Positions 289 through 53,000 of a stretch of DNA of 64,000 bases are shown in pieces. The notes beneath the pieces are model-generated. The model searched no databases. It worked only from the letters and a program-made list of their open reading frames with translations, and was not told the DNA's origin. The stretch lies in NCBI GenBank assembly GCA_030704615.1, contig CM060731.1, positions 73,470,001-73,534,000 of the forward strand, read 5' to 3'. The stretch comes from Takakia lepidozioides (Eukaryota > Plantae > Bryophyta). Position numbers and translations under genes: made by a program. Numbering within the stretch: position 1 is the stretch's first letter; the number at the start of each line of letters is the position of its first letter.

Positions 289-3200
289 CTAAACATGAGA
301 TTGTAGCTTCCACACTTCCGGTGTTTCAAAGGAGCAAACAGGAGAGAGGGTGAAGGCTTGGGGCATTCCACAGGCACACTGTGCTTGCACACGGAAATCC
401 AGTGTGCTGCAGGCATCTGGAACAGGCAGCAAGTGCACATAGAAGGCCTCCACCATTGCCACTCCCAGATAGTTTGAGTCCTCATATCCAAGGCTGCCCA
501 CAGATTCTGGTCTGCCTACTTCTCCTCCTGCCTGTGTTTTACAAACGTACACATAGTACCGAACCCATTTGCAGCCACTGTGTCTGTCAGCTCCAGACTC
601 CAGCTTGCTGGTCCTCAAACTCCAGATCAGATTCAAGCTAACAAACCTATGTTCTTGGGACACTTGTATCCAAGAGGGGCTGCAACTTTCAAAGATGATG
701 GAGGGTAAAATGCTGTCATGTTCTTCGCACCTGCTGATGCGAATGTGTCCCAGCAATGCATCGTAGACATTATCCATGCCAGACATGCCTTTAATACTGG
801 CTGATCTTCGAGAAGACTCACTTGTGTTGTCACTATCCAAAATATTTTTCTCGATAGCAGAAAACAATTTGTCAATGTGTAAAGTATTGGAGAAAACAAC
901 CCCATAGATGTGTCCAACTACACAGTCGCCAAGTTTCAACATATGTTTGCGTACACTCCAAGTACTGCGCCCTGCAGTGTCTCTGGCAATGGTGTCAGAA
1001 GTGATGGGCAGCTTTTGAACAAAACAATCCTCATTGTTTCCATATTCTTGTACCTTATCCCCTTCCGTCATCAATAATACTGAAGTCCATCTACCTCCCT
1101 TGCATACCCTGACTACGAGGCAAAAATGGAAGTCAATTCCAAGCAAGACCTGCAAGATAAGCCATTTGCCACAGTTTATTTGAGATCCGTATCTTAAGAG
1201 TTAGTAGAGAAAAGTTATGACAACCCAAATACTTTCTTGAAACTACTAAAAGTGACAACGATTCCCAATCGAGAACAGCATATGCATCCTCAAAGACGTT
1301 GTAGGATGCTTCTGGTTGGGAACAGGATGAGGATTACTGAATAGGAGACATGGAGAGGTGCTCCAACAACAGGCACATTAGCGTGATATAGTAGCACAAC
1401 ATCCAGCATGCCGCATCCTGAGAATCTGATGCATGATCCTCCACTGAATGCAGCCTCCTCCTGACTGCCATGCCATGTCATTTGGTCAGCTGCACATATA
1501 CCCCCTAAAACCTTCTTGTGGGAGTTTGCACTAACTGCCTAAACCTTGCCCCTAATTCTCCTTCCTCTCATCCACACGACCACAATGGACTTAGCCTCCT
1601 CCTGCCAGTCATTCCATGTCATTTGGTCAGCTGCACATAAACCCCTTTAAGTTTTCTTGTGGCAGCTTGCCACTAACTGCCTAAACCTTGCCCCTAATTC
1701 TCCTTCCTCTCATCCACACAACCAAAACGGACCTTGTCACAATGCCAGTGGTGTCTTGTAATGCATCCTTGTTGCTCAAGAAGACGGGAAAACAGATTCA
1801 ACATGGGCACTGTGGAAAAAAAATTTACCTTATCCTGACTTGCAAACTATGTTCTTTTGCTTCCTGAGACTCCTTCACCACCCACAGAAGTGGCTGTATG
1901 GCAATAATCCGCCCCCAAGGAAATGTTACCCAACATAGCCCCACTCCCAGACAGAACACAAACCCTGTGTCTCTTTTGAGGCAAAAAAGATTAGGAAAAG
2001 GATGCTGGTTCCAATGTAAACCAGACAAAAGAAGTATACCTGCAAGTTTTGGCAAGACAGGTTAAACCAAGGCAGGCTAGAGACCTCCTTCCCCTCCGAA
2101 AACATGCCTCTGCCACAACCCTGTTCCCCAGTCCCTTCAGCATGGGTGCCATTAACTAAAAACAATAGGCTTAGGTAACCCGATAAATTGCTTCTATCAC
2201 CTGCTTCAACCACCTCCAACAGGTTGTCAACCACATTCCTACAGTGTAGGTATCACAAGCTCCATAACATCCTGACGTTAGAATCCAGCAAGATTTAGAC
2301 AAGAGGATCTGGATTATACATGATTTTTTGGTGGAGTAACAGTGGTAGAAGCACATTACAACGCATATGTGGATGTGTGTAAGCATAGACAAGGATTGGA
2401 AGGGCATATATTTGTGAGAGTAGCAACATCTTCCTCTTGTAAGACGGGCTTCATAGCAAGTCATCCACATACCTGGTCAAAATCAGAGAAGAAAGGGAGC
2501 ACAGTCGGATTCAGTCGAGCAATAGGCCAACATTGTTCAATGAGGCCCCACCACCTGCATCAGACTCTAGATGATTATCAACGTGAAACAGAAATTAGTC
2601 TAGCACAGCTCACCATCCCTTTTTTTTTTCTTGAACAAACAGAGGTGGCAGTCACAGAAGCAGGGACCCCTGTGAACGGCAGTATTGAACTGATACTGTT
2701 CCACAAGATGCTGGAGAGAGTCTGTTTAGCATGAAACATCCTTCTGAATGCTTACTCTAGTGAGATTAATTAACCTGCGCTCTATTTGTAAGGCTGTTAA
2801 TGGGATACAGACCTGCTCTGTGCAGCCTTGAAATCCGGGGGCTGGTTGATTTCATACACCCAGGCAGGGGCAAATAGGGCAGCTGAAACTTCTGCATTCT
2901 GTGCCACCTTGAGGGCCACATCACTCTGCAATCCACCCACACCTACGTCTTCCAACTCAACTTACACCATGCATCACATCATGGTGTCTTGCTCAATAGA
3001 TACCCCCTTTTCATAGAACATAAACCCTCCCTACCCCGAAAAAAACTATGTCATCATCTCTCATCCCATTTTTTCTCGACCTAAGTCTGAGAGGACACAT
3101 CAATGGTGCAGTGAAGGTGTCCAAACCACTGGAAACTCTTTAGTTATACAGCACCATCTAATTTCCCTGCTAGCAAGGAGGGATGCAAGTAAAATTGCAC

Positions 3201-19191: not shown

Positions 19192-21456
19192 TCAACTGGA
19201 GTCATCCTCTCCAGCCAAAACTGGAGTGTCATGGTGCTCTTTCATAGAGACACCCATTAAGTCACTAGGGGTTGAGGCAGGATCAAGCTCCCAAGATTCT
19301 GTAGGCACACCCGGACTCTCACTGCCATGCATCCGGTGTGCAGGTATCCGGTGAGAGAATCTCCCCAAAACATGCTTGGATGGAATCCAGAAGGATAGTG
19401 CATCACCTCCTGCCTTGAACAGGGTTTTGAAACCCCTCACTTTTGCTACTGGTACCACTTTCACACCTTTTCCCTTTGAAAATTTACTCAGAACTTCCAC
19501 CAACTCATAATCATATTTCAAATCATCAACCCCCTTCTGAGGATGCCACTTGTCCCAGTCTTTATAGAGAGCCCAGACCTCCCCAGATCCAGGGTAGAGT
19601 CTAAATACTCCCTTCCCATCTACTTTGATGTCAATCCTGTGAGAAAAAGCAGGAAGCTGCTGCGGACACACACTAGCCAGCATGAACTCTCCGCACGAGG
19701 CAGAGAGGGATGCTGATGGGACTAACCAAGAGGGTTTAACTGCTTGACTCACGGGCTCCAACCAGATAACCGAAACCTCGAAAGGGTCATGCGACACGCT
19801 GCGGATGCGGCCATAAAACCGGGGCATTCCATCATGGTCATCATACAGGGCCCAGAACTGATCGTTCTCTATGTCCTTCTCTGTGCGCTTCTCATCAAAC
19901 TCATGGAAATCTGCATTTACAACATGAATCTGTCTCTGTTCTTCAAGAGTCGGAGTATTCATCACAAGAACCATGGGGGCTGGCCATACACTGACCTGTG
20001 GCGTCACCCCGCCTTCTGCTGTTTTTAAGCTGCTCATGTTTCTTCCAGTATTCCCCTTCTTAGTATTTGTCCGCTTTTGTGATGACGTTGGTTTTACATT
20101 TGACTTGCCGGGGGAGTTTTTCTGACTCCTCTGTCCACCGGCCTCAACCCTGGGAGACCCAAGTCCAACGAATGGTGCCAGCACCTGCATCCCTTCTTCA
20201 ACCAGACCTTCCGTGCTGTACAAAGGTGGAGCCTCTCCGTTCTTCTTAGGAGTTTTCCTTCGTGCTTTTGTCTGCTCTCTCCCAGTCCCTTTCTTTCCTG
20301 TTGCTTCACCTGTCCCCAGCCCATTGGACACACCTTGGGGCTTCAAACTCAAATATTCCTTCTTCTTTCCCTCCGCATTTTTGGTCAAAAATCTATAGAG
20401 AACTGCCTGGTTGTCAATCAAGTTGACTTGGTGGGGAGGGGTGCCCTCCACACTCTCCTCAATGTTTACTGCGGCACTAAAATCTTCTTGACTCTCTGCA
20501 TTACAATCACTCAACTCTTCATTCCATTTGCTTTCACGACTTTGCTCACCTTCTGTCAGGTCACCTTTGTCGCTGCAATCCCCACAATTGGATCCCGCTG
20601 GTCCGCCCTCTTTTCTCCCGTTGGCTGGCGCAGCTGCTCCAGCCCTGGGCTGTAACTGTCCATGAATGGCGTGAACCTCATTTACAGCAGCCCCGTTCAA
20701 ACCCGATAAGCCTTCAGCTGTTGCGATTGCTCTAATGGCCATTGGAGAACAGGGCTGACCCGAGGGGCTGACAGGCCCCACCACTCGTATCGACTTTCTT
20801 TTAGCTGACTCCCTCTCAATGTCATGCGCCCCCACTCGCTTACCGCTGGCGTGAGACTGGTGCAAAGCTCTCTCTTCTTCCATAGTGGGCTCATCTTCTT
20901 CCTCGTTTTTCAACAACTCCAGCTTTTCTTGCAGCTTTGACTTCTCGTTCTCAAGTTGACAAACACGAATCTCCAATGCTGCAGTCATTCTTACCCAGGT
21001 CCGCTGCGTTTTTGCCATTTCCCCCTTAAGGTCCGTGGTGACATCCATCCCGAACTGCAACATTTCTATCATCACACTCCGCATGGGTACCTCCATGAGG
21101 GTCAAATCTATAGACAACCCTCTAGTTTTCTCTTCACCCCCCAGAGTGCACAGTAGCCGCACGGTGCCATCACGCACAAAATGCAAGGAGTAGATGGAAT
21201 CAGGCTTCTGCTCGCTGAGGTGCAAGTGAGCCTCCTCGATATAGACGTCCTCTGAGACATACCACTTCTTTGCGCGATGCGCAATGATTTTCTCTGTTGC
21301 GCATATAGACCAAGCATGAAACCCATCTAAAATCCACAGACTGAAGTTTGTTGCAAACCACGATCCCTTCACGTAAATGGAGTTGCAATCATACGCAAAA
21401 CCTACTCTCTCCACATTCTTCAGCTGCACAAATGTCGTGTTTCCCAGCGCAGCCAT
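19192..21456 (-). CDS. Intronless protein: XRCC4-like N-terminal head and coiled coil, low-complexity linker, C-terminal DUF3444
   Basis: The N-terminal IYVKGSWFATNFSLWILDGFHAWSICATEKIIAHRAKKW..YIEEAHLHLSEQKPDSIYS matches plant XRCC4 as recalled (IFVKGTW..DG..W...ATE....RA..W....Y...A...L..Q.P.S.YS). The C-terminal DFHEFD..QFWALYDDHDGMPRFY..FSH..YP..GEVWALYKDW..YELVEVL..RFSHRIP..WELDPASTP is typical of DUF3444. One 754-codon open frame. Confidence 0.85.
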   Translation of the reverse strand: MAALGNTTFVQLKNVERVGFAYDCNSIYVKGSWFATNFSLWILDGFHAWSICATEKIIAHRAKKWYVSEDVYIEEAHLHLSEQKPDSIYSLHFVRDGTVRLLCTLGGEEKTRGLSIDLTLMEVPMRSVMIEMLQFGMDVTTDLKGEMAKTQRTWVRMTAALEIRVCQLENEKSKLQEKLELLKNEEEDEPTMEEERALHQSHASGKRVGAHDIERESAKRKSIRVVGPVSPSGQPCSPMAIRAIATAEGLSGLNGAAVNEVHAIHGQLQPRAGAAAPANGRKEGGPAGSNCGDCSDKGDLTEGEQSRESKWNEELSDCNAESQEDFSAAVNIEESVEGTPPHQVNLIDNQAVLYRFLTKNAEGKKKEYLSLKPQGVSNGLGTGEATGKKGTGREQTKARRKTPKKNGEAPPLYSTEGLVEEGMQVLAPFVGLGSPRVEAGGQRSQKNSPGKSNVKPTSSQKRTNTKKGNTGRNMSSLKTAEGGVTPQVSVWPAPMVLVMNTPTLEEQRQIHVVNADFHEFDEKRTEKDIENDQFWALYDDHDGMPRFYGRIRSVSHDPFEVSVIWLEPVSQAVKPSWLVPSASLSASCGEFMLASVCPQQLPAFSHRIDIKVDGKGVFRLYPGSGEVWALYKDWDKWHPQKGVDDLKYDYELVEVLSKFSKGKGVKVVPVAKVRGFKTLFKAGGDALSFWIPSKHVLGRFSHRIPAHRMHGSESPGVPTESWELDPASTPSDLMGVSMKEHHDTPVLAGEDDSS

Positions 21457-23190
21457 CACAAGCTACTCACGACCTTCCCTCACTCCAACCAAATATACTC
21501 TCTCTCCCTCTCTGCAAGAGCATAATTGACTTGGAAATGTCCTAGGCTTCCACAGAATCTACCCTCCTTCCACGGCCTGGAACCGCAAGACCACCACACC
21601 TAATCACAACAGACTCTCCGACTCCTGTCCTATTCCTCGCCCCTTTCAACACAAACTCCTCCGCAGCAAAGCAAGTTCCTCGGAGAAAAAATTGTGGAAA
21701 TCAAAGATACCATAGACTTTACCTTCACCTTCACCACATACTCAACAAGACTCCTTCTCTATCTCTAAGTTACCATCTCCGCCATCGCTCGCCCTCTCTG
21801 CGAAGCTCGAGAGTGACCAAGAGTTCTGGAGATCCGTGCAGCGAAGGAACTTCCTCTCTCTCGCCTCCTCTCTCACGAGAGTCTTACCACGCACCCGAGT
21901 GATCGTGGGTTCAATTCCTGGAAAGTACATTTCACACACTAGAAGCTCGGGTTTGGAAAGCTCTCAATTGTTGGCGGCTCTTCAATGGGACCCGGATTTC
22001 AGAAAGTTAAGCAAAAAAATGGGGTGACTGCTCTTACCCAAAGAGGAATGAATCATCTAACCCTTTTCTCTTCTTCTTTTTCTTTTTCTTTTTCTTTTTT
22101 ACATTCAAATTATCGTTATATCGTTATATCCTTAGTATCCAAAGTATCTTTATTTTTTAATTGTATTTTTCTTTTAGAAAATACCAAAATTGCAATTTAG
22201 CAGGTGCACCTATGAGGGTAACTTGCGAACCACTTAGATTGACGGGTTATTTTTTCCCGCCTCCTTTTCTTAATTTGATCAACAGGGCTTCTGTCCCCTT
22301 TTTATTTATTTTTTAAATAGTTATTTTCCAAAATGGTTACAATCCCAAGTTGGAAAGAACGACAATAGGGGACATGGTGCGCCAAAATAGGAACAAGATC
22401 TTCTCTGCTTCCCAAAAAAAGCATAATTTCATTAAACTTTAACCAAAGAATTCTGTCCTATATACAGCCCATTCGAATCTCGTTCTATTAACCCAAAAAA
22501 TAAAACAAAAACAAAAGCCATTACATGACCTCGAAGGTTAAAAGTTAAAAGTACAAAAGGTTATTACTGTTTTTACGTTTTTACCCTTGCCACAGTCGTA
22601 CTTCTCTTGGAGTCGCAAGTGAGAACCAGTCCCGAATTCACTTGCGAGAACAGGGAAATCGTGAAATTTTTCACTCCTTGCTTCTATCGTCGGGATTCCC
22701 ACCAACCCCCTCGCCGGAATTCCTGGTTCAGGAATTCTTTTTAATTGAAATCCCGGGCAACGTTTCCCACGACTTTATGTCATGACATACATGGGCGGCA
22801 ACCTATGTAGGATGTACATGTGAACATATGTATGAAACATCCATGTTATGACATGGCAAGCCACTTGGATGACATGATCCGCGTCACATGGCTGTTGTAC
22901 ATAAAAGCGGATGGCATACCTAGAGTCATTTTTTGAGAGATTACAATTTTACAGAAATTTCAAACAAATCTCTCAAGCTGCTTGAAAACAAGTGCAGGGT
23001 GAGTCTTTTGAATGCTTGCAAAGAGAGAACCTTGCCCTGCATCAGATAATGGAGGCTGTTATCATCCCTACAACTATAAATCGGCCAGGTCTCCTTCCTC
23101 CATGGAGAAAGAGAAAGGAAGGGAGAAAGAGCGAAGGCTCAGAGCCCCAGAACCCAAGAACTGCAAGCTCACAAAATGCAAACAATGTTT

Positions 23191-32067: not shown

Positions 32068-34500
32068 ATGGCATCTGTCACCCCTTGGGATGTGAGGACA
32101 CTATGTAAGCAGGGAAGATTGAAAGAGGCGCTTTATGCTTTGGACCAACAAGGTGTCCCGGCAGACTCCAATACTTATGTCTACCTCTTGCAGGGGTGCA
32201 TCAACACGAAAGCCCTGGCAGATGGAAGGCAGGTGCATTCCCACATCCTCCGCACTGAATTCAAGCCAAACATTTTTGTTGGCAACACCCTTGTCAACAT
32301 GTATGCCAAGTGCGGGAGCATGGTGGATGCACGACAGGCATTTGAAGAAATGCCTCAACGAGATACAGTCACGTGGACTGTCCTGATGGCAGGATATGCC
32401 AAGAATGGGCGTACCAAGGAAGCTTTCAAAATTTATGAGCAAATGCAATTGGAAGGGGTGATACCCAATAGTGTGACCTTCATTTCTGTTCTGAATGCGT
32501 GTGCCAATCTAGGAGCCCTGGAAGTGGGGAAGCAGGTTCATGCTGATATATTGCGCGCTGGAATTGTGTCAGACATCTTTTTGGAGACCACCCTAGTTGA
32601 CATGTATTCCAAATGTGGTAGCATAAAGAATGCCCGTCAGGTGTTTGACAGAATGGCTGTACGAAATGTGGTCTCATGGAATGCTATAATAGCAGGATAT
32701 GCTCAGCATGGGCTGGGTAAAGAGGCTCTGAAAATGTATGAGGAAATGCTTAAGGAAAGTGTGACACCTGACAGGATCACATTCCTTTGTGTTCTCAATG
32801 CATGTGCAAATCTAAGAGCTCTGGAAAAGGGCAAACAGATGCATGCTGCTGCCATCAAAGCTGGAATTGCAGCGTATATTAACTTGGAGAATACCCTTAT
32901 TGACATGTATGCCAAATGCGGAAGCATGGAGAACGCGCTTGAAGTGTTCAACAAAATGGCTGAAAGAGATGTGGTCTCATGGAATGCATTGATTGCAGGA
33001 TATTCACAGCATGGGCATGGTGAAGAAGCTCTTGAAGTCTATGAACAAATGAATCGAGAAGGGGTGACGCCGAACAGGGTCACATTTGTTTGCATTCTCA
33101 ATGCATGCCCCAGTCTAGGAGCCCTGGACAAGGGCAAGCAGGTCCATGCTGATATCAGGAAAGCTGGAATTGCAATAGATGTTATCTTGGGGACAACACT
33201 AGTTGACATGTATGCCAAATGTGGCAGTGTGAGGGATGCATGCCAAGTATTTGATGAAATGGCCACAACGAATGTGATCGCATGGAATGCCATGATCACA
33301 GGATATCTTCACCAAGGGCATGGTGAAGAGGCCCTCAGAATGTATGAGGAAATGCAACTGAAAGGGTTGATGCCTGACAGGGTCACATTCACTGGCATTC
33401 TTAATGCATGTGCCAGCCTGGGCGCCCTGGAGAAGGGCAAGGTAGTACATGCTGACACCATCAGAGCTGGGATTGTGTTCGACGTAATTTTGGAGACCAC
33501 CCTTGTTGACATGTATGCCAAGTGCGGAAGTGTGGAGGATGCCCATCAAGTGTTCGACAGAATGGCGACTCAAAATTGTTTCTCATGGACTGCAATGATC
33601 GCTGGATATGCACAGAATGGATGTGGTAGGAAGGCTCTTGACCTATTTGAACAAATGCTACAGAAAGGCTTGAAGCCGGACGGTATCACCTTGATTGCTG
33701 TTCTCTCTGCATGCAGCCATGCAGGCTTAGTGGATGAAGGCCACCGTCACTTTGCTTCCATGAGTCGCGATCATGGCCTAACAGCTACAGTACAGCATTT
33801 TGGCTGCATGGTGGACCTTCTTGGTCGTGCAGGGAGATTGGATGAGGCAGAGGACCTCATTAATAAGATGCCTGTTGAACCAGGTGCTTCAGTGTGGGGA
33901 GCCTTGCTTGGAGCTTGCAGAATTCATGGTAATGTGGAGGTAGCAGAACGTGCTGCAAATTGCGTTCTACAGAGGGATCCACAGGACGCTGCAACTTATG
34001 TGATGCTATCAAACATCTATGCTGTGGCTGGAAGGTGGGATGATAAAGCAAGGGTGAGAAAAATGATGGAGGAAATAGGGATCAGAAAGGAGGCAGGGCG
34101 CAGCTGCATTGAGGTCAACAATCGAGTGCATGCATTTGTTGTAGAGGACAAATTACATCCACAGATTGAGGATATCCGGTCTGAGCTGAAGAGATTGTCT
34201 GAGCAGATGAAGGTGGCCGGGTACCTACCAGATACACACTTTGTGTTGCATGATATGGAAAGGGAGCAAAAGGAATTTGCACTTTGCCACCATAGTGAGA
34301 AGCTGGCCATCGCCTTTGGCCTCATAAGCACACCCCCAGGAACACCTATCAGCATCATCAAGAACCTTCGGGTGTGTGGTGACTGCCACACCGCCATCAA
34401 GTTCACATCAAAGATTGTTGGGCGAGCAGTTGTTGTACGGGATGCCCGCCGCTTTCACCACTTCCAAGATGGAGCCTGTTCTTGCGGGGATTATTGGTGA
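32068..34500 (+). CDS. PLS-class PPR protein with E1-E2-DYW deaminase domain (C-to-U organellar editing factor type)
   Basis: About 17 P/L/S motifs (5 YxKCGS S-motifs), HSEKLA, KNLRVCGDCH and terminal CSCGDYW. The frame is open upstream to a splice acceptor at 31960. Confidence 0.96.
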   Translation: MASVTPWDVRTLCKQGRLKEALYALDQQGVPADSNTYVYLLQGCINTKALADGRQVHSHILRTEFKPNIFVGNTLVNMYAKCGSMVDARQAFEEMPQRDTVTWTVLMAGYAKNGRTKEAFKIYEQMQLEGVIPNSVTFISVLNACANLGALEVGKQVHADILRAGIVSDIFLETTLVDMYSKCGSIKNARQVFDRMAVRNVVSWNAIIAGYAQHGLGKEALKMYEEMLKESVTPDRITFLCVLNACANLRALEKGKQMHAAAIKAGIAAYINLENTLIDMYAKCGSMENALEVFNKMAERDVVSWNALIAGYSQHGHGEEALEVYEQMNREGVTPNRVTFVCILNACPSLGALDKGKQVHADIRKAGIAIDVILGTTLVDMYAKCGSVRDACQVFDEMATTNVIAWNAMITGYLHQGHGEEALRMYEEMQLKGLMPDRVTFTGILNACASLGALEKGKVVHADTIRAGIVFDVILETTLVDMYAKCGSVEDAHQVFDRMATQNCFSWTAMIAGYAQNGCGRKALDLFEQMLQKGLKPDGITLIAVLSACSHAGLVDEGHRHFASMSRDHGLTATVQHFGCMVDLLGRAGRLDEAEDLINKMPVEPGASVWGALLGACRIHGNVEVAERAANCVLQRDPQDAATYVMLSNIYAVAGRWDDKARVRKMMEEIGIRKEAGRSCIEVNNRVHAFVVEDKLHPQIEDIRSELKRLSEQMKVAGYLPDTHFVLHDMEREQKEFALCHHSEKLAIAFGLISTPPGTPISIIKNLRVCGDCHTAIKFTSKIVGRAVVVRDARRFHHFQDGACSCGDYW

Positions 34501-36488: not shown

Positions 36489-37193
36489 TCAGGTCGGACG
36501 ATTTTGTTCTAGTACAGCAGATTTGGGATTGTTCATGGGCGGCCCCTTGGCGGTGCGCTCTAATTCTTGTAATCTAAAGGTCACGAGTTTGTCCCAATTT
36601 CCTCCCTCAAAGAGTACCCCAGCTCGCCCATCGGTAACTCTCTGGACAATCCCGGAAAACATGTGGTAAGGATTCTTGGGCGATTTCACTACCACAGTCA
36701 TTCCTGGCATAAGTAGAGGAGGAGGAGGGGCCCTGACTTTCGCTCCCGGTTTGACAATCTCTTCTCTAAGCTTCTGAAGCTCTCTAGAAACCTTCAAAGG
36801 GGGTGCATTGTTCTTCACGAATTGTTGAAGCCCTTTCTCCCCACCAGGAAAGCCACCTGTAAGGCCCCCAAGCTCCTTCTCAAACGATCCAGCGGCCGCC
36901 TCAGTTCCCTCCGAGGCCGAAGTGCCACCCCCCTTCTTCTTCTCCTTCTCCTTCACCAATTGTGAAGCTCCAGAGAAAATCTCCTGCGCTTTCTCAGAAA
37001 GCAGACCGTCCTCCCCTCCTGGAAGACCCCTCCCACCCAGAACCTGCCACAGATCGAACCCTTGGGCTTTCACACACAATCTGATCGCCCCAGGTTTCTG
37101 GGCAGTCCAGGGCCTTGAAGAATCCAACAATCCATTGCCCCACAACGAGCTTCGCTGATCCAAGCAAGTGAGGGGCAGCATGCAACCCACCAT
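36489..37193 (-). CDS. ndhS: NAD(P)H dehydrogenase-like complex subunit S (NdhS/CRR31), chloroplastic
   Basis: [31 protein letters not shown] and [40 protein letters not shown]. The ATG at 37193 precedes a transit-like sequence; an upstream ATG at 37316 is also possible. Confidence 0.93.
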
Positions 37194-37697
37194 AGCTCCT
37201 CTATCTGCCAGCCTTTCGTGCACACACTGCGGATAGCCTTCTTTCCACCCCACCCCTCTTCCATCGCCCTCATTCTCGTCGACGTCTTCGTCAATCGTCC
37301 ACTTCTTTCCACTCATCGCTCTCGATGATTTTCCTTCACGGAAAATGGAGGCAGAGCTCCTTGTTTTGAGCAGATGCACAGTGAGAGTGGGGATGGATTT
37401 CCCTCACACTTGTGTTGGAGAGCATCTCTCATTCATTTGGAAGCATGTTGGGGAATGTGGATAGGCCAAGTGGCCCGAAAGCTGCCAATTCGACTTTGAA
37501 TGATGTTTTCTTGTCCAGCACCAGGCAAATCACTCCCTCCGAAAGCAGTTTTTCCAAATCATCTTCAGGAAATGGAAGGAGAGGAGGTTTCAAGTCCAAC
37601 GATTGGGAGAGGAGACAGATGATTCAATGAGCAATAAGAACAGAGAAAGCAAAGAGAAAGCATAGCACAAACCCGTAACCATAAGTAAGTGCTCAGG

Positions 37698-38261: not shown

Positions 38262-41174
38262 TCAGTGGAGGAATGATGCCTGATATGCAGGGGGAGGGGG
38301 TGGCAAACCACTACCAAATTGATAGCTATTGTAAGTGGCAGACGCATTATTGTAAGCTGAAGATCCATAGACAGGGGAACCTACGCCATCAGAATACAGG
38401 TAAGAGCTGGACAGTGACACAGGGCTCCGGTTTCCGCCGGCATATGTAGTAGAATAAGGCGCTTGGCCACGCCGATCATAGTTATTCTGTGCTGCCAAGC
38501 TGTATGATGAGACACCCACTCCACTATAATTCCTTTCTGATGCTCGATAATAGCCTCTGTTATCATTATTAGAAGCTACAGCGCCATACCCTGCTCCACT
38601 GCCATTGCTGGCACGAGGCCGTTTGGTTTGTGCTTTCACTGCAACAGCTGCCCGCTTCCTGTCTGACTTGGCCTTCTCCAGCTGCACAACCCGCTTCTGG
38701 AGTGGCGCTGATGGATACTGACTCTCGAGTGTATATTGCTCAATGCACTTAAGCACAGCCTTAAGAGCAGCTAACTCCTTCATCGTTGCATCATTCTGCA
38801 AGATGTCAAAATGCAAAACCTCAATGCATAAGCAGAAACAGGCACTGCAAATCTTAGAAGTACTCTCATTTGATACACGTAGCCAAAAACGAAACCACCT
38901 GACTGCATAATCTTCCTACGTCTGCTCAGAGTTACTAAAGGAACCAATCCTAGCTTGAAGATGAATAGGGGAGGACACCCCAGTCATCTCTTCCACTGCA
39001 AGACCATGTTCAATGGGAATCCAAGCAAAGTGCTCATTATATCCTTGAGAACAACCCTTTCCCTACCACATATTCCTGCCGTTCTTTACCTCAAAAAGGA
39101 ACTGTAAGCACATCTCTTTGGAAAATCTGCGTACCTGAGCAGCAGCTGAACTATTTCCAGTTTTGAGGATGGCTTGTGCAGTTTTCCGAGCCTCCTTGAG
39201 ATACGCTTTCAGCAAGGGGATGGGCTGAACACGATCCATCATACCAAAAGACTGGGCAAAGGAGAGAGCCTCAATCTGTTTACCTTCTTTTGCCAGCCTG
39301 TCCACCACATCTGTAGTGAAAGAGAACAACAATAATATACTAAATACAATAAGTAGAGATGATTGCAACTCCATAGAGAGGCATCCCAGACAAATCAACC
39401 AATATTTTCAGACAGAAGAGAGGTTAGGAGGAGCAAGTTCTGAAGAGAAATTCCAACCCCAGCTTTTGCAACAATGGTTGCACCCTTAATCACATAATTT
39501 AAAGAGAACTTACCTGTTCGTCCTTAAGAGAGTGCGGCCAGTATCATGTTAAAAGCTTACTACCTTTAAGTAGGGACAAAGACAGAACTGACCAGAAAAG
39601 CTGGTCCTTTATCCATAAGTCTGGGGAGGAACAGTTATTATCATCTTCCAATCTTTTTGGAAAGGACAAGGGCTTAAATACATATCAACAGAAGCCTACA
39701 CAAGAAGGCCCCAGTTTGCTAGCAAGCATTCAGATCTGTTCTTCAAAACAGTAGAGTTGTAGCAGGAAGTGTAAGTGGCTAAGGTGGGCAGGCAACAGCC
39801 TTTATATGAGCTGAGAGGAATTGAGCAGGCCTGAAATGGACCATACATATTAGAGATCCATGTCAGTTCAGATTGAGGCCCTTCATGATGGCCTCACCCT
39901 CGAATTGAGGCTGACTTGAGGGAGAGACACCAACCTGGTATCTTGGCAGATAGTCCAAGGGATCGGCATAGCACAGGTGTTTGCCTGCGCCGGGCAACAG
40001 CAGTGACGAGTTTGCACAGCTCGTCATCATCATACTCCGAAGCAATTCCAAATGTTGCCAACAGCTGTAGAAAAGCCTGTGCATCCAATGGATTGCCGGC
40101 AGCATCTCCATTGACATTCATCTTGGACTTCCATCGGTCGGCAACCTGCTTGGCCGACACCTTGATATTGGAGGGTACCACGGGATGATCCGCTCCCAGC
40201 ACGGGGTCTGCCAACGCCACAGCCAGGCACTCCAGAAGAAGAACACAGGCACGGCGATTTGCCGATGCTCCTGAGTCCTTATTCTTATCAGCCCCTTGGT
40301 TGGCAGGAACCCCCGGGTCTGGAAGGTGGTAGCCCTCCAACGCATCCAAGACCATGCGTGCAGGGTCGATGGCACACTGCAATGCAGAGGGCAGCTCATT
40401 GCGTAAGGCTCCCACATCTTTCCGATGGTCGACAATATACTTTCTCAACCCATCGCCATCCATAATCTCGCACAATGATTTAAGCTGTGGGCGCACCCTC
40501 ACTTCGGGTACTACTGGTTTGGCAGGAGGAGTGGTAGTAGTGGTGGTAGCAGTGTTATTAGCATCCTTGCTAACAGCGACTAACCCATTGGAAGCCACTT
40601 CTTTTTCAACAGCACTTGCAACTGTTGCAGCTGGGACTCCAGAAGGCTTTTGAGATGCAGCGTCTACCTCCATCGCCTGAGAGATATTGCCATTTAATGC
40701 ACTGTTGGCTGCTGCAGTGTTCTTAGTATCTGACTCATGGTTCACGGTTACAGCTTCAGAAACACTGTTCTGAGGGGCTTTAGCAGCAGCTTCAGCTTCA
40801 AGGCGTGATCGCTCTTCCAGCCACTTGCGCTTTTCTTCAAAAAGAGATGCAATAGCAGAATCTTTTTGTTCTTGCACCCGGGTGAGCATTGCTTGCTCTT
40901 TCGCAGAGACAGCCACTTCCCTCTTATCGAGGGCCCCTTGCAATTCCTGACTTTTGCTCTCAAAGGCCTTTTCCTTGGCACCCAACTCTTCCAGGCGCTT
41001 CTTCATAGATTTCTCTAGTTCTCCAAAATACTCCTCAAACTCTTTCCATTCAAGGGTACAGCTAGCTATGGCTACTCTGTGCTTTTCAAGGTCCGTAAAG
41101 ACTTTGAAAAGCCGTTCCTTTCTTGCAGGAACAGCCTCTAATTCCTTAACACTGGCAGCCACCTCCGTCGCCAT
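38262..41174 (-). CDS. FRIGIDA-like protein, 3 coding exons
   Basis: Exons 41174-39935 (LCEIMDGDGLRKYI..ELPSAL..DPARMVLDALEG..RRACVLLLE..DAQAFLQLLATFGI), 39310-39135 (GKQIEAL..PIPLLKAYLKEA) and 38795-38262 (KELAALKAVLKCIEQYTLE..KRPR). Phases are compatible. Confidence 0.93.
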
Positions 41175-46463: not shown

Positions 46464-48367
46464 GGCATTACAGGTCCGCCTTTTATCCTCCAGACTGGGC
46501 ATGTGGCCCTTTGCCACAAGGCCATGGCAGGCAAATGCTTACAAGTCTGTTATCATTTGGGTTTGCTCTGTTCAGATTTGGGGAACAAAGGCTTACAAAT
46601 CATTGACGGCACAAATGTTATGTGTGCAAGAATTGCCTATCTGCAACTGATCACAGTTAAGCAGGTTGACAACGGGCTTCAATTAAGCATTCCTTCTATG
46701 TTCCCACTTCTGTGCGTAAGTATGAACCTAAAAGAACTGCGAAAACCCTCTCCTAAGAAGCAGAGAAGAAAAGTGATGCAGTATGAGACGCCCTGCCTAT
46801 GAAGGCCCATTGCATTAAGTGGGGGCAGTTTTCTAGGTGTGAGGTTTGAATGAGGATGCCGATGGAACTCCATGCAAATTGATTCCAGTGCCTTCTCTGA
46901 TTCAGGGTGAGTGCTTGGAGGCAACGGATTTCTGTCACTTTGACAACAATTTCTTATCAACGAGCAGGACGGCAGGAAGCAATGAGACGATCCAAAAGGT
47001 CTGAACCCCCAAGTTAAGGCTTTAAGGAGGGGACTTGGTTTATTTGGAGAAAAGATGATGACATGGATAACTTTTGTTCTGTGAGTTGCTCCCAAGGTAC
47101 GCATACAAAGACAAGCTGGACAGTTATGGACATAGCCTATATCACATGGAAACAGCTAGCTATGTCTTCCCCTTGACATGACGTAAATAAGCAGACATCG
47201 GCTGCATGGAACTGTATTTGCAAGTTGATTCTTTGTTCTCTCTGTAATATCAGTTGTGTTTGTCGTCTTTGTGTGTGCAGATAGCCCGAGTCATTTCGAG
47301 ACATTTTGGAAAGACTGACCATGAATACGTTTATGATGCCTTGCCAAAGGGGTAACAAAACAGAGATGCACCCCCTGACAGCCCTGCGGGCAATTACCTC
47401 ATCTACTTTATAGGACTATGTTTGGAGTTTACTAGACATCCATTGTACTTAAAAGATAGTCCTACAGGCTTGAGCTTCTTGTTTCCCGAGGGCTTTTGCC
47501 TTCATTTTGCGGCCTTCGTCCTCTCCAGTGCTGAGGCAGTCAGGCATGCCCTAGTGCCTTGTCCAGGCCTTTTAACTCCATTCACCCTGTTCCGTGTGTT
47601 TGCAATGACAAGTCTTGCCTTCATGTCTTGTCAGCTTTGTGAAGAGGTTTCCTAATAAACCTTGGTGTGGGGTCTTACTCTTCTCCTGCTAGAAGAAGAA
47701 AGAGACAAAGAGATGAAATGGAATGAAACAACACTTTAACATTCATGGAAAGCTGGTATCAAACACAGTTGCCAAGTTGAAATAGAGCCATCACTGATGC
47801 ATATTATTGCATGAAGGGTAAGGAAGGCTGGCATGGTGCACAACTGCAGACAAAATTTGCAAGATTGCCCCATGTCGGATGGCCCTCTCACCTGAGCAGC
47901 AGATGCAGCACACAGCACCCAATTCAGATGCCAACACACTGGATCCACACCGCCACAGCAAACCCCCCAACGAACCCACCATGCACCTTCACGATTGCTT
48001 CCATCTTTCCTTCCTGCAACCAACATCCGTCTAGACTTTTATTACCAGAGACTCACTGAGACTTGGATGTGCATACTGTCTGCCCAATATTCATACAACC
48101 CATTACTTACCTTGATGATGCTGCTTAGCAGCGCTCTAAAGATCACTCTGGTGAATACTTTTCACTTGTTATCAACATTTTTCCTTTTTCTTGTTGTTTC
48201 TTGTATGAAAATTTGCATTATATTGATGGGACTCGATCTTCTTTATTCTTTTCTCTTTCTTTTTCTTTTTGCATACTTTTCAACGACGTTGTGTCATATG
48301 CATATTTTTTTAATTACTTTTTAATAAAGCTAAATTGACGTGCAAAAGAGAAGCCATATTGGTGGCA

Positions 48368-49556
48368 ATGGCGATCACTATGCATCGTATGATACAAGGT
48401 GTGCTGTTGCTTTTGGCGATCTTAGCTTCGGCTTTCAATCCGGTCAAATCAGTTTGTCCATCGGGTGCCGTGTTCATGTTCGGAGACCCGCTTTCCGATA
48501 CTGGAAATGATCACCTAGCATTTCCATCAAACCAACAAGTATACTTGAACAGACCTTACGGAGAAACATTTTTTGGACATCCAGCAGGTCGCTTTTCAAA
48601 AGGGCGTATTGTGATTGATTTTGTAGCTCACGCCTTTGGACTACCCTTCCTCACCCCAATTCAAGCATATGCAACGAACCGTACCCACTCCAATTTTCGC
48701 CATGGGATAAATTTTGCTTACGCTGGAGCTACTGCACGAAACGATGACTACTTGGTTCCATATCATCTCGAGCTTCAAGTTGAACAATTTTTGGATTTCA
48801 AAACCAATGCAAAATCAAAACTGGCAAGAGTAGCAATACCCACTTCAGAAAATTATGAAAATGGATTATACATTATACATGTTGGGGGCAACGATTTCTC
48901 ATATCAATATCTCCGACACATGGGACCTACGGAGGTCATGAAACATATTGTGCCTCAATCGGTGGCTGCAGTTTCAGCTACTACAGAGAATTTATATAAC
49001 GCAGGGGCTAGACATTTTTTCATTTACAACAATCCTGCCGAAGGTTGCTCCACTATTTTCCTCTCAAATTGGGGCACTCCTGAGGTTTCGAGAGATGAGC
49101 ATGGGTGTTTGATTCCCTTTAATGAGGTTGTTTTAGCCTACAACGAGGGCTTGAAAAGTATGATTCAAGATCTCCAACAACGGCTTCCGGGAATTTCTAT
49201 TCATTTCGGTCGATATTATGACATCAATGTGGACATTGTGAAGAATCCACAAAAATATGGATTTCCGAAAGAGAACATATTTCAAGCGGCTTGTGGGTAC
49301 GGCCATCCATACAAATTTCAATTTGGATGCTATGTGCGGAAACATTAATGCAACAGTAGGAGGGAAAGTTGAGGGTTTAGATGTATACAAATCTAGAGAT
49401 CCCAACAACTATATTATATGGGATGGAGTACACTTTACAGAGGCTTTTTACAAGATTATAGCAAAGTCATTTTTGACAGGACAATATTTAGAGCCGCCCA
49501 CCAATTTCATGGCAGATTGCAAGTTGAACGGGGAATATTTTGCATACGGAATGTGA
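48368..49556 (+). pseudogene. Intronless GDSL/SGNH lipase, probably a pseudogene
   Basis: Signal peptide, then FGDPLSDTGN (the catalytic Ser is Pro), GRFSKGR, GINFA, GGNDF. A one-base frameshift at ~49312 (tacaaatttc) separates the rest of the gene from the YIIWDGVHFTE block, which is in another frame. Confidence 0.8.
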
Positions 49557-50009: not shown

Positions 50010-53000
50010 ATGACAGGGCTGAATCCAACGTGGTTGTTAGTTGGACATCAGACTTATGGGATGGGTAGCACCTCCAGTGTCACCACTGCTTTTGAAAACG
50101 GACCAGGAGAGGGAGTCAACAAGAATTGTTCTTCCACTTCTGTGAGGACACTATACATAGGACCAAAAGAGGCACTGCACAATTTGAACCAACAGGGCAG
50201 TCGGGTAGATTCCAGTGCTTTCTACATTGGTCTCCTACAGAAGTGCATCAAAATGAAAGATCTAGAAGAGGGAAAGCAGGTTCATACACACATTATTGAA
50301 CGTAGATTCAAGCCAAACATTTTTCTACTCAACACTCTTGTTAATATGTATGCGAAGTGTGGGAGCATGGTGGATGCACGTAAAGTGTTTGACCAAATGC
50401 CTGAACGAGATATGTTTACATGCACTATAATGATAACAGGATACCACCAGTATGGGTGTGGTAGGGAGGCTTTTGAGATCTATGAGAAAATGAGGCAGGA
50501 AGGGGTGGCGCCTGACAGGGTGACATTTACTTGCATTCTCAATGTGTGTGCCAGACTAGGAGCCCCCGAAAAGGGCAAACAGGTCCATGCTGATATCAGC
50601 AAAAGTGGAATCGCACTAGATGTAACTCTGGAGAATACCCTTGTTGCCATGTATGCCAAATGCGGGAGGATGAAAGATGCGCGTCAAGTGTTCAACAGTA
50701 TGGCTCAACGAGATGTGCTCTTATGGAATGCTATGATTTCAGGATATACTCGGCATGGCTGTGGTCTGGAGGCTCTGGAGATCTATGAGCAAATGCAACG
50801 GGATGGGGTCAAGCCGGACAGAGTTACGTTCATTTGTGTTCTCAATGTCTGTGCCAAGATAGGAGCCCTGGGAAAGGGCAAAGAGGTACATGCTGACATC
50901 ATCAAATTTGGAATTGTGTCATACATTAACTTGGAGACTGCCCTTACTGACATGTATGCCAAATGTGGGAGCATGGAAGACGCTCGGCAAGTGTTCAACA
51001 ATATGGCCGAACGAGATGTGGTCTCATGGAATGCAATGATTGCAGGATATGCTCAGCAGGGGTGTGGTAGAAAGGCTTTAGAGATCTTCGAGCAAATGCA
51101 ATTGGGAGGGGCAAGGCCCGACAGAGTCACATTCATTTCTGTCCTCGATGCATGTGCCTGTCTAGGAGCTCTGGAAGAGGGCAAAGAGGTCCATGCTGAC
51201 ATCATCAAAGCTGGAATCTCTTCTTATATTAATTTGGAGAATGCCATCGCAAACATGTATGCCAAATGTGGGAGCATGAAGGATGCTCGTCGTGTGTTTG
51301 ACAATATGGCTATACATAATGTGATCACATGGAACACCATGATTGCAGGATATGCACATCATGGCTGTGGTAGGGACTCTTTCGAGATCTATGAGCAAAT
51401 GCAAGAGAAAGGGGTGATGCCTGACAAGGTCACCTTCCTTTGTATTCTTAATGCGTGTGCTAGCCTAGGAGCCCTGGAAAAGGGCAAAAAAATCCATGCT
51501 GAAATAATCAAAGCTGAAATTGGGTCATCTGTAAAGTTGGAGACTGCACTTGCTGACATGTATGCCAAATGCGGGAGCATGAAGGATGCAAGGGAAGTAT
51601 TTGACAGTATGTCTCAACGCAATGTGATCTCGTGGAATGCAATGATCGGGGGATATGCTCAGGATGGGTGTGCTGGGGAGGCTTTGGAGATGTATGAGCA
51701 AATGATACAGGATGAGGTAATACCTAACCAGGTGACGTTCATCTCCGTTCTCAATGCATGTGCCAGCCTAGGAGCCCTGGCAAAGGGCAAACAGGTTCAT
51801 GCTGACATAATCAAAGCTCAAATTGGGGTGTATATTAACTTGGACAATACACTTGTTGACATGTATGCCAAATGTGGGAGCATGAAAGATGCCCGTGAAG
51901 TGTTTGATAACATGGCCCAGCACGACGTGGTCTCATGGAACACGATGATTGCGGGATATGCTCAGCATGGGGGTGGTACGGATGCCTTCAAGATGTATGA
52001 GCAAATGCTACAGGATGGGGTGAAGCCTGATAGGGTAACGTTCATTTCTGTTCTCAATGTGTGTGCCATACTAGGAGCCCTGAAAGAGGGTAAAGAGGTC
52101 CATGCCACCATCATTAAAGCTGGAATTGCATCCTATATAAATTTGGAAAATACTCTTGTTGACATGTATGCCAAATGCGGGAGCATAAAGGATGCGCATC
52201 AAGTGTTTGAGAATATGGCTGAACGAAATGTGGTCTCTTGGAATGCAATGATCGCAGGATATAGTCAGCATGATTGTGGTGGGGAGGCTTTTGAGATGTA
52301 TGAGCAAATGGTACGGGATGGGGTCCAGCCTGACAAAATTACCTTCATTTGCATTCTCAATGCATGTGCAAGCCTTGCGGCCCTGGAAAAGGGCATAAGT
52401 GCCCATGCTGACATTGTGAAAGCTCAAATTGCGCCAGATATCATGTTGGAGACTGCCCTTGTTGACATGTATGCCAAGTGTGGAAGTGTAAAGGATGCCC
52501 GTCAAGTGTTTGACAAAATGGCTGAGTGTGATTCCATTTCCTGGAGCGCGATGATTGCAGGATATGCTCAGCATGGGTGTGGGAAGGAGGCCCTGCAACT
52601 ATATGAACAAATGCAACAGAAAGGCTTGAAGCCGAACAGTGTCACCTTTATATCTCTCCTCTCTGCATGTAGCCATGTGGGTCTAGTGGAAGAAGGCCAC
52701 CACTACTTCGAGTCAATGAGTCGAGATTACAGCCTCGTTCCTACAGTGGAGCATTTTGGCTGCATGGTGGATCTTCTCGGCCGTGCAGCTCACTTGGATG
52801 AGGCAGAGGACTTCATAAGCAAAATGCCAATGAAACCAAATGCTTTGGTGTGGCGGGTCTTGCTTGGTGCTTGCCGGATTCATGGTGCTGTGGAGGTAGC
52901 AGAGCGTGCCGCAAAAAGGATTGTTACGAGGGATCCACAGGATCCTGCAGCATATGTGCTGCTATCAAACATTTATGCTGCGGCTGGCAGGTGGCACGAT

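What the first reader, a model, noticed from the sequence alone, without database searches (positions are those of the whole stretch)
19192..21456. Intronless XRCC4-head / DUF3444 chimeric protein
Seen: one uninterrupted ORF with an XRCC4-like head and coiled coil (~21456-20900), a basic disordered linker with NLS-like segments (AKRKS, KARRKTPKK), and a full DUF3444 (~19915-19265). Known: XRCC4 is the NHEJ scaffold that binds ligase IV, and DUF3444 normally follows a DnaJ domain in plants. No J-domain HPD motif is present, and the XRCC4 segment recalled as YAKFLSVLNAKK (ligase IV-binding region) is not recognisable. Inference: a retro-derived or shuffled gene in which an XRCC4 dimerisation head replaces the J domain. 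It could be a lineage-specific XRCC4/XLF/PAXX-like paralog linking repair scaffolds to chromatin.
Basis: partly seen in the sequence, partly recalled or inferred. Interest (0 to 1): 0.8.

Follow-up and report, generated by a model that had tools for sequence, protein, structure and literature searches.

The report
Moss XRCC4-like protein with histone-tail reader
This single-exon gene belongs to a conserved, so far undescribed moss family. It joins the head and stalk of the DNA-repair scaffold XRCC4, without its ligase-IV-binding part, to DUF3444, a plant domain recently shown to bind the histone H3 tail.

Summary
Window 19192-21456 (-) is one open 754-codon frame. Pfam finds an XRCC4 N-terminal head (aa 26-97, E 1.3e-9, above the curated cut-off) and a full DUF3444 (aa 508-713, E 3.9e-60). 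A profile of moss homologues hits human XRCC4 alone in the PDB (E down to 2.7e-10). The AlphaFold model (pLDDT 89) superposes best on XRCC4 (Z 14-16.6), ahead of PAXX, SAS-6, CCDC61 and XLF.

It is not a one-off chimera. The same architecture occurs in Sphagnum, Ceratodon and Physcomitrium, in two old subclades. The heads form one clade (100/100) apart from canonical plant XRCC4, which Ceratodon still has as a separate multi-exon gene.

The ligase-IV clamp motif is absent in 27 of 27 family members. The XRCC4 coiled-coil Pfam model hits 0 of 25, against 7 of 8 canonical plant XRCC4s. There is no J domain and no similarity to the PKL-binding middle part of the DnaJ-DUF3444 proteins.

A 2026 preprint shows that Arabidopsis DUF3444 binds the H3 N-terminal tail. 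My reading is a nuclear, dimeric, ligase-IV-independent XRCC4 paralogue tethered to chromatin.

Expression in this genome could not be tested. The scan noted a second such gene 61.7 Mb away in the same genome (s1-479833).

The parts
19192..21456 (-). Complete single-exon coding sequence, 754 aa plus TGA stop (19192-19194)
   Evidence: The N-terminus MAxxGNxT matches the start of 24 moss homologues.
21085..21456 (-). XRCC4-type beta-sandwich head, aa 1-124
   Evidence: Pfam PF06632 E 1.3e-9. Profile against PDB hits XRCC4 only. AF2 model pLDDT 89. Z 14-16.6 to XRCC4 chains. The DG..AW core motif is conserved.
20896..21084 (-). Stalk helix, aa 125-187, the presumed coiled-coil dimerisation element. 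It ends before the position of the ligase-IV clamp.
   Evidence: One continuous helix 125-187 with pLDDT 92-96. It aligns to the XRCC4 stalk. No LIG4 motif and no PF21924 hit.
19936..20895 (-). Low-complexity linker, aa 188-507, poorly conserved across homologues. It holds basic NLS-like patches: GKRV at 20833-20844 (family consensus GKRK), AKRKS at 20791-20805, KARRKTPKK at 20242-20268.
   Evidence: Composition: 41 K+R, 39 D+E and 106 S/T/P/G of 320. K206, R207 and K208 are (nearly) invariant in the family. dN/dS is about 1.1 in a Sphagnum pair. That it is disordered is inferred; it was not modelled.
19252..19959 (-). DUF3444 domain, aa 500-735 (Pfam core 19318-19935), with two W-A-L-Y and two F-S-H-R motifs
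   Evidence: Pfam PF11926 E 3.9e-60. All residues invariant across 41 DUF3444 domains are kept. AF2 model pLDDT 86, all-beta barrels. Weak BAH/Tudor/SAWADEE-like matches.

Best explanation
This is a functional member of a moss-specific paralogue family of XRCC4. Shown: the N-terminal 190 residues keep the XRCC4 head and the first part of its stalk helix. Shown: the segment that clamps DNA ligase IV is lost, while canonical XRCC4 persists as a separate gene in mosses. Shown: the C-terminus is a complete DUF3444. From the literature: DUF3444 of Arabidopsis JDP proteins binds the histone H3 N-terminal tail. Inferred: the protein is nuclear because of its basic patches. Inferred: it dimerises through the stalk as all XRCC4-superfamily proteins do, so it presents two H3-tail readers on long flexible linkers. 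It would then be a ligase-IV-independent scaffold anchored on nucleosomes. The free XRCC4-type heads could bridge chromatin, or recruit or compete for head-binding partners such as XLF, PAXX or XRCC4 at breaks.
For: Both domains are supported by Pfam. The head profile hits only XRCC4 in the PDB, E 2.7e-10 to 1e-6. The fold matches XRCC4 best: Foldseek E 8e-9; Z 15.8, rmsd 2.4 A over 182 residues to 1ik9_A, against PAXX 13.1, SAS-6 12.6, CCDC61 12.2 and XLF 11-12. The same architecture appears in 25 of 25 aligned homologues from Sphagnum, Ceratodon, Physcomitrium and unnamed assemblies, with invariant residues in both domains. The family is monophyletic (100/100) and separate from canonical streptophyte XRCC4. 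Canonical XRCC4 is also present in Ceratodon (P0135). The LIG4 clamp motif is found in 0 of 27 family members but in canonical XRCC4 from fish to plants. PF21924 hits 0 of 25 family members against 7 of 8 canonical proteins. In a Sphagnum pair dN/dS is 0.24 for the head, 0.49 for DUF3444 and 1.1 for the linker. H3-tail binding by DUF3444 comes from bioRxiv 10.64898/2026.09.14.751381. DUF3444 is also the C-terminal module of non-angiosperm DNMT3 (PMC6453930), which fits a portable chromatin-targeting domain.
Against: Dimerisation, nuclear localisation, H3 binding by this DUF3444 and any partner of the head are all untested. H3 binding was shown only for Arabidopsis JDP domains, in a preprint, and the residues involved are not given in its text. 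Structural matches of DUF3444 to histone readers are weak (Foldseek E about 3e-3; Z about 7, in the range the tool calls common). The dN/dS estimate rests on few substitutions (dS 0.04-0.10) in one pair of homologues, not on this gene. Loss of the LIG4 clamp could mean the protein has left DNA repair altogether.
Confidence: 0.55

Rival explanations
1. It is the genome's ordinary XRCC4 (the NHEJ ligase-IV scaffold) that merely carries an extra C-terminal domain.
For: Pfam XRCC4 head above cut-off. XRCC4 is the best sequence and structure match.
Against: The clamp motif is absent in 27 of 27 family members, and the XRCC4_CC model hits none of 25. The family forms a separate clade on a long stem of 0.93. 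Ceratodon has both a canonical multi-exon XRCC4 and two fusion genes. Physcomitrium's damage-induced XRCC4 is given a locus id (Pp3c1_38430) in the literature; I could not map the fusion protein P0052 to a Pp3c id.
Confidence: 0.05
2. It is a derivative of the DnaJ-DUF3444 (JDP/DILL) proteins in which the XRCC4 head replaced the J domain. It would act as a subunit or regulator of the PICKLE CHD3 remodelling complex rather than in repair.
For: It shares DUF3444, which in JDPs stimulates PKL through H3-tail binding. JDP homologues exist in bryophytes according to the same preprint.
Against: There is no profile similarity between the family's linker and the JDP region between the J domain and DUF3444, which holds the PKL-associating helix (hhalign probability 0.05%). 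The family has one DUF3444 copy against two or three in J-proteins. Its DUF3444 forms its own clade (99), not nested in either angiosperm copy.
Confidence: 0.12
3. It is a chromatin architectural or bridging protein with no role in repair. The XRCC4 fold serves only as a dimerising or filament-forming module, as in SAS-6 and CCDC61, and DUF3444 reads H3 tails.
For: The LIG4 clamp is lost. The stem branch is long after duplication. XRCC4-superfamily heads are reused outside repair, and SAS-6 and CCDC61 are close structural matches at Z 12-12.6.
Against: Nothing speaks directly against it. It overlaps with the best explanation and differs only in denying a repair link. XRCC4 proper is clearly the nearest relative by sequence.
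Confidence: 0.2
4. It is a decaying pseudogene or a chance or assembly chimera.
For: There is no expression evidence here, and the linker evolves nearly neutrally in a Sphagnum pair.
Against: The intact 754-codon frame has a chance probability of about 7e-14. It keeps every residue invariant across 25 family members and across 41 DUF3444 domains. Its start and stop match those of the homologues. The architecture is independently present in at least four other genome assemblies.
Confidence: 0.03

Closest known systems
Canonical XRCC4 (human XRCC4, PDB 1ik9/1fu1; plant XRCC4 such as Marchantia P0138, Selaginella P0132, Ceratodon P0135)
   Same: Head fold and first half of the stalk helix, and the DG..AW core motif. 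It is the nearest relative by profile (E 1e-16 to 1e-32 to plant XRCC4s) and by structure (Z 14-16.6).
   Different: No ligase-IV clamp motif and no PF21924 coiled-coil match. It forms a separate clade. It carries a 320-residue basic linker and a C-terminal DUF3444. The coding region is intronless, while canonical genes have introns.
Other XRCC4-superfamily paralogues: XLF, PAXX (including Arabidopsis PAXX, 8p26), SAS-6, CCDC61
   Same: Head plus coiled-coil architecture. Like XLF and PAXX, it is a paralogue that does not carry the XRCC4 ligase clamp.
   Different: These are structurally and by sequence more distant than XRCC4 (Z 11-13 against 14-16.6; no sequence hits). None of them carries a histone-reader domain.
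Arabidopsis JDP1-4 / DILL1-3 (DnaJ + PAD + DUF3444 subunits of the PICKLE complex; 2026 preprints)
   Same: DUF3444, about 35-40% identical, with all family-invariant residues kept. It is presumed to bind the H3 tail.
   Different: No J domain or HPD, no detectable PAD region, and one DUF3444 copy instead of two.
Plant DNMT3 of non-flowering streptophytes (DNMT3 methyltransferase + C-terminal DUF3444; Yaari et al. 2019, PMC6453930)
   Same: The same design principle: an effector module followed by a C-terminal DUF3444. The scan also noted such a gene in this genome (s1-470166, unchecked).
   Different: The N-terminal module here is an XRCC4 head and stalk, not a methyltransferase.

Membership tests
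XRCC4 (canonical NHEJ scaffold) | N-terminal head domain matching PF06632 above the curated cut-off | tested here: met
   38.4 bits against a cut-off of 26.2, E 1.3e-9. 25 of 25 family members match.
XRCC4 (canonical NHEJ scaffold) | Head beta-sandwich followed by a long stalk helix, superposable on solved XRCC4 | tested here: met
   AF2 pLDDT 89. 1ik9_A Z 15.8, rmsd 2.4 A over 182 residues. Foldseek E 8e-9.
XRCC4 (canonical NHEJ scaffold) | Coiled-coil segment with the ligase-IV clamp (PF21924; motif F-[VA]-x-V-L-N-x-K-K) | tested here: not met
   The motif is found in 0 of 27 family members, but in canonical XRCC4 from fish to liverworts and moss. PF21924 hits 0 of 25 family members against 7 of 8 canonical plant XRCC4s at E below 0.01.
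XRCC4 (canonical NHEJ scaffold) | Orthology: groups inside the canonical XRCC4 clade and is the lineage's only copy | tested here: not met
   It forms a separate 100/100 clade on a 0.93 stem, sister to streptophyte XRCC4. Ceratodon has canonical P0135 as well as the fusion proteins P0034 and P0075.
XRCC4 (canonical NHEJ scaffold) | Binds the DNA ligase IV BRCT linker and supports end joining | not testable with these tools
   Needs complex prediction or biochemistry.
XRCC4 superfamily (XRCC4/XLF/PAXX/SAS-6/CCDC61) | Homodimer through the stalk coiled coil | not testable with these tools
   Only monomer prediction was available. The model shows a 63-residue helix with pLDDT 92-96.
DUF3444 (PF11926) | Full-length match to the Pfam model, with family-invariant residues kept | tested here: met
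   E 3.9e-60 over profile positions 3-211 of 211. All 10 columns invariant across 41 domains are kept.
DUF3444 (PF11926) | Binds the histone H3 N-terminal tail | not testable with these tools
   Shown for Arabidopsis JDP1 and JDP3 in a preprint. The contact residues are not named in its text.
JDP/DILL DnaJ-DUF3444 proteins | N-terminal J domain with HPD | tested here: not met
   No PF00226 hit and no HPD tripeptide.
JDP/DILL DnaJ-DUF3444 proteins | PKL-associating (PAD) helix between the J domain and DUF3444 | tested here: not met
   hhalign of the family linker against 45 JDP middle regions gives probability 0.05%. A very short motif could escape this test.
Plant DNMT3-DUF3444 | Cytosine-5 methyltransferase domain | tested here: not met
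   No such Pfam hit at E up to 1.

The most novel reading that the evidence does not exclude
Mosses carry a ligase-IV-blind XRCC4 paralogue anchored to H3 tails. Through its heads it would engage XLF, PAXX or XRCC4 at breaks, and so tune or dampen end joining on chromatin. This would contribute to the unusually high homologous-recombination gene targeting seen in Physcomitrium and Ceratodon, both of which have the family.
Probability: 0.1. Interest if true: 0.85.

Novelty: new variant of a known kind. Interest (0 to 1): 0.55.

Why it matters
XRCC4-superfamily proteins are known as scaffolds that act through heads and coiled coils. As far as I know, none has been described with a built-in histone reader; I did not search for this beyond the DUF3444 architecture. 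DUF3444 has only just been assigned a function, H3-tail binding. It now appears as a portable chromatin-targeting module attached to three different effectors: J-domain/PKL, DNMT3, and here an XRCC4 head. The family is confined, as far as an exhaustive profile search shows, to mosses, the plant lineage used for homologous-recombination gene targeting. Physcomitrium has an intronless orthologue that can be knocked out directly, so a link between chromatin reading and repair-pathway choice is immediately testable. No paper in the searched library mentions the two domains together.

Tried and rejected
Word-index searches with the whole protein and with residues 1-200 found nothing. The words came from the divergent head and the low-complexity linker, so these blanks are not evidence of absence. 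The DUF3444-region search and the exhaustive profile search then found the family.

The short hits P0121-P0124 first looked like head-only relatives. They are truncated copies of fusion-family genes: they run into the family's linker and lack the clamp motif.

Physcomitrium Logan contigs carrying P0052 were compared with the genome to look for spliced transcripts. They are colinear with the genome, so they say nothing about expression.

Exact-sequence look-ups of this protein and three neighbouring proteins found nothing, so the organism was not identified.

The linker was tested for homology to the JDP middle/PAD region, with a negative result. The DUF3444 tree could not say which angiosperm copy, or which other DUF3444 lineage, donated the domain. 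DNMT3-type DUF3444 sequences were not in hand.

The paper's 'second XRCC4-like gene' of Physcomitrium (Pp3c14_21160) could not be matched to P0052.
Full report
THE OBSERVATION. The ORF listing gives one open frame at 19192..21459 on the minus strand. The ATG is at 21456 and the stop, TGA, is at 19192-19194, giving 754 aa. An in-frame stop lies just upstream. At the window's own stop-codon frequency (0.039), a 754-codon open frame has a chance probability of about 7e-14. Pfam finds PF06632 (XRCC4 N-terminal domain) at aa 26-97, E 1.3e-9, 38.4 bits against a curated cut-off of 26.2. It finds PF11926 (DUF3444) at aa 508-713, E 3.9e-60, over essentially the whole model. There is no J-domain hit and no HPD tripeptide.

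GENOMIC SETTING. The neighbours are land-plant genes: two intronless PPR-E-DYW editing factors, a Frigida-like protein, NdhS, a GDSL lipase and an ENGase fragment. Its nearest relatives for this gene are moss proteins (see below).

IS THE HEAD REALLY XRCC4? The single sequence hits only an XRCC4 chimera in the PDB, weakly (E 0.039). A profile of 17 moss homologue heads (alignment A2) hits 17 distinct XRCC4 sequences at E 2.7e-10 to 1.2e-6. Nothing else falls below E 0.3.

- AlphaFold2 with that alignment gives a confident model: mean pLDDT 89.4, strands up to residue 123, then a single helix 125-187.
- Foldseek ranks XRCC4 chains first, at E 8e-9 to 1e-6.
- In the VIA-align second look, XRCC4 entries score Z 13.5-16.6 (for example 1ik9_A: Z 15.8, rmsd 2.4 A, 182 residues). 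This is ahead of Arabidopsis PAXX (13.1), SAS-6 (12.6), CCDC61 (12.2) and XLF (11-12).

The head and proximal stalk are of the XRCC4 type within the XRCC4 superfamily.

IT IS A CONSERVED FAMILY, NOT A ONE-OFF CHIMERA. The word-index search restricted to the DUF3444 region returned 162 proteins. About thirty of these carry the precomputed pair PF06632 + PF11926. The named ones come from Sphagnum tenellum, S. compactum, Ceratodon purpureus and Physcomitrium patens; the rest come from unnamed assemblies and metagenomes.

- Angiosperm hits are DnaJ + DUF3444, and the liverwort Riccia hit has DUF3444 only.
- An alignment of 25 family members shows invariant residues in the head (F38, D44, W49, Y89, L91, C103), in the stalk (R152, R156, A159), in a basic GKRK patch (K206-K208) and throughout DUF3444.
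- The roughly 300-residue middle part is poorly conserved.
- All 25 members hit both Pfam models.

DISTRIBUTION. I used the one exhaustive HMMER search, with the head profile against 1.84 billion representatives, because a 'moss-specific' claim rests on absence elsewhere. It gave 106 hits.

- The only long ones are five representatives of this family, a Spirogloea gene model with an unrelated N-terminal extension, and one weak repetitive hit.
- None of the new hits contains DUF3444.
- The next-best full-length hits are ordinary XRCC4s of 269-338 aa. They come from Welwitschia, Diphasiastrum, Calypogeia, Selaginella, Marchantia, Carex, legumes and Ceratodon itself (P0135).

RELATION TO CANONICAL XRCC4. 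A maximum-likelihood tree of heads plus stalks (29 rows, LG+C20, rooted on fish XRCC4) puts the fusion family in one clade (100/100) on a long stem of 0.93. It sits inside streptophyte XRCC4 as a whole (99/98) and beside, not within, the canonical streptophyte clade (85/81).

- The family has two old subclades, each holding both Sphagnum and Ceratodon sequences.
- The window's head is unresolved at their base.
- On the DUF3444 tree the window's domain branches just outside Sphagnum P0005 plus the Bryopsida members of one subclade (SH-aLRT 88).
- That fits a moss lineage that split off early, or a third paralogue. I leave the species open.

WHAT WAS LOST. Canonical XRCC4s from fish to moss carry F-[VA]-x-V-L-N-x-K-K in the stalk, the region that clamps the ligase-IV BRCT linker in 1ik9. 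A pattern search finds it in canonical proteins but in 0 of 27 family members, the window included. The Pfam XRCC4 coiled-coil model PF21924 hits 0 of 25 family members and 7 of 8 canonical plant XRCC4s at E below 0.01. In the model the helix ends at residue 187 and runs into an acidic stretch, roughly where the clamp would begin (the position is my inference from the alignments). So a defining feature of XRCC4 proper was tested and not met. I file the protein as a paralogue, not as XRCC4.

GENE STRUCTURE AND CONSTRAINT.

- The coding region is intronless here and in Physcomitrium P0052 and Sphagnum P0005, P0016 and P0019, where gene span equals 3 x (aa + 1).
- Ceratodon P0075 has about 578 nt of intron.
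- Canonical XRCC4 spans 3584 nt for 338 aa in Marchantia and 1655 nt for 330 aa in Ceratodon, so those genes have introns.
- A retrocopy origin of the head is possible but old and untested.
- For the close Sphagnum pair P0019/P0016, NG86 dN/dS is 0.24 for the head, 1.1 for the linker and 0.49 for DUF3444. dS is only 0.04-0.10, so this is indicative only.
- Together with conservation across moss classes, this argues for a working gene with two constrained domains joined by a free-evolving tether.

WHAT DUF3444 DOES.

- A September 2026 preprint (10.64898/2026.09.14.751381) reports that Arabidopsis J-domain proteins JDP1-4 form complexes with the CHD3 remodeller PICKLE. It reports that their DUF3444 binds the H3 N-terminal tail in peptide pull-downs. 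Deleting the domain, or five contact residues, impairs stimulation of remodelling.
- A companion preprint describes the same proteins as DILL1-3.
- Yaari et al. 2019 (PMC6453930) had noted DUF3444 as the C-terminal domain of DNMT3 in non-flowering streptophytes.
- My AF2 model of the window's DUF3444 (41-sequence alignment A3, pLDDT 85.6) is all-beta.
- Its first lobe gives weak matches enriched in histone-reading barrels: UHRF1 tandem Tudor, DNMT1, ZMET2, EBS and AIPP3 BAH, SAWADEE and PHF19 Tudor. Foldseek E is about 3e-3 and Z about 7, which the tool itself calls a common level.
- I take the fold as compatible with a reader, not as proof.
- The window keeps all ten residues that are invariant across 41 DUF3444 domains, including those of J-proteins.

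NOT A J-PROTEIN WITH A SWAPPED HEAD. J-proteins have two (sometimes three) DUF3444 copies, and this family has one. hhalign of the family's linker against an alignment of 45 JDP regions between the J domain and the first DUF3444 gives probability 0.05%. That region holds the PKL-associating helix. The family's DUF3444 forms its own clade.

MECHANISM. Shown: XRCC4-type head and stalk; loss of the ligase clamp; co-existence with canonical XRCC4 in moss; a complete DUF3444; conservation. From the literature: DUF3444 binds H3 tails, and XRCC4-superfamily proteins are stalk-mediated homodimers whose heads make head-to-head contacts. Inferred: a nuclear homodimer that places two H3-tail readers on flexible basic linkers. 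That is a ligase-independent XRCC4-like scaffold tethered to nucleosomes, with free heads to bridge chromatin or to engage XLF, PAXX or XRCC4. Whether it acts in repair, in PKL-type remodelling or purely architecturally is open; see the rival explanations.

LITERATURE. No paper in the searched library contains both 'XRCC4' and 'DUF3444'. Physcomitrium studies treat Pp3c1_38430 as XRCC4, 149-fold induced by bleomycin. They mention an unstudied 'second XRCC4-like gene' Pp3c14_21160, which I could not match to P0052. The sequences and their automatic Pfam annotation are public, but the family seems undescribed.

No multimer prediction was available. The scan's own notes list a second XRCC4-DUF3444 gene 61.7 Mb upstream in the same genome (s1-479833) and a DNMT3-DUF3444 gene (s1-470166). 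Both lie outside this window and were not checked.

VERDICT. This is a new, conserved variant within the XRCC4 superfamily: an XRCC4 head and stalk without the ligase clamp, fused to an H3-tail-binding DUF3444, and known so far only from mosses.

Noticed in passing
window 32068-34500 (+) and 50010-53456 (+): Two intronless PLS-type PPR proteins with E, E+ and DYW deaminase domains (810 and 1148 aa), typical organellar RNA-editing factors. The scan has a separate note on the first one (s1-473546).
   Followed up: no
window 39894-41174 (-), 36489-37379 (-), 48335-49348 (+), 289-1155 (-): ORFs with Frigida-like (PF07899), NdhS (PF11623), GDSL lipase (PF00657) and ENGase C-terminal Ig-like (PF25529) domains. 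They are probably exons of ordinary land-plant genes.
   Followed up: no
L007 1001-3711 (Ceratodon purpureus CM026431.1): The Ceratodon subclade-A family member P0075 has about 578 nt of intron, while the other four homologues examined are intronless. This points to intron gain, or to a different history for that subclade.
   Followed up: partly
P0131 (Spirogloea muscicola, 884 aa): The XRCC4 head, stalk and clamp motif sit at residues 603-800 behind a long unrelated N-terminal part. This is probably a merged gene model rather than a real fusion.
   Followed up: no
P0001, P0002, P0003, P0004, P0006, P0113, P0120: Some seed-plant DUF3444 proteins (Papaver, Oryza, Leersia and unnamed ones) carry three tandem DUF3444 copies, and the liverwort Riccia P0007 has two without a J domain. 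The domain is duplicated and shuffled freely.
   Followed up: no
P0126, P0229-P0233 (legume XRCC4 isoforms): These proteins, annotated as XRCC4, did not match my strict clamp-motif pattern although they group with canonical XRCC4. This is probably a sequence variant of the motif or an isoform effect.
   Followed up: no
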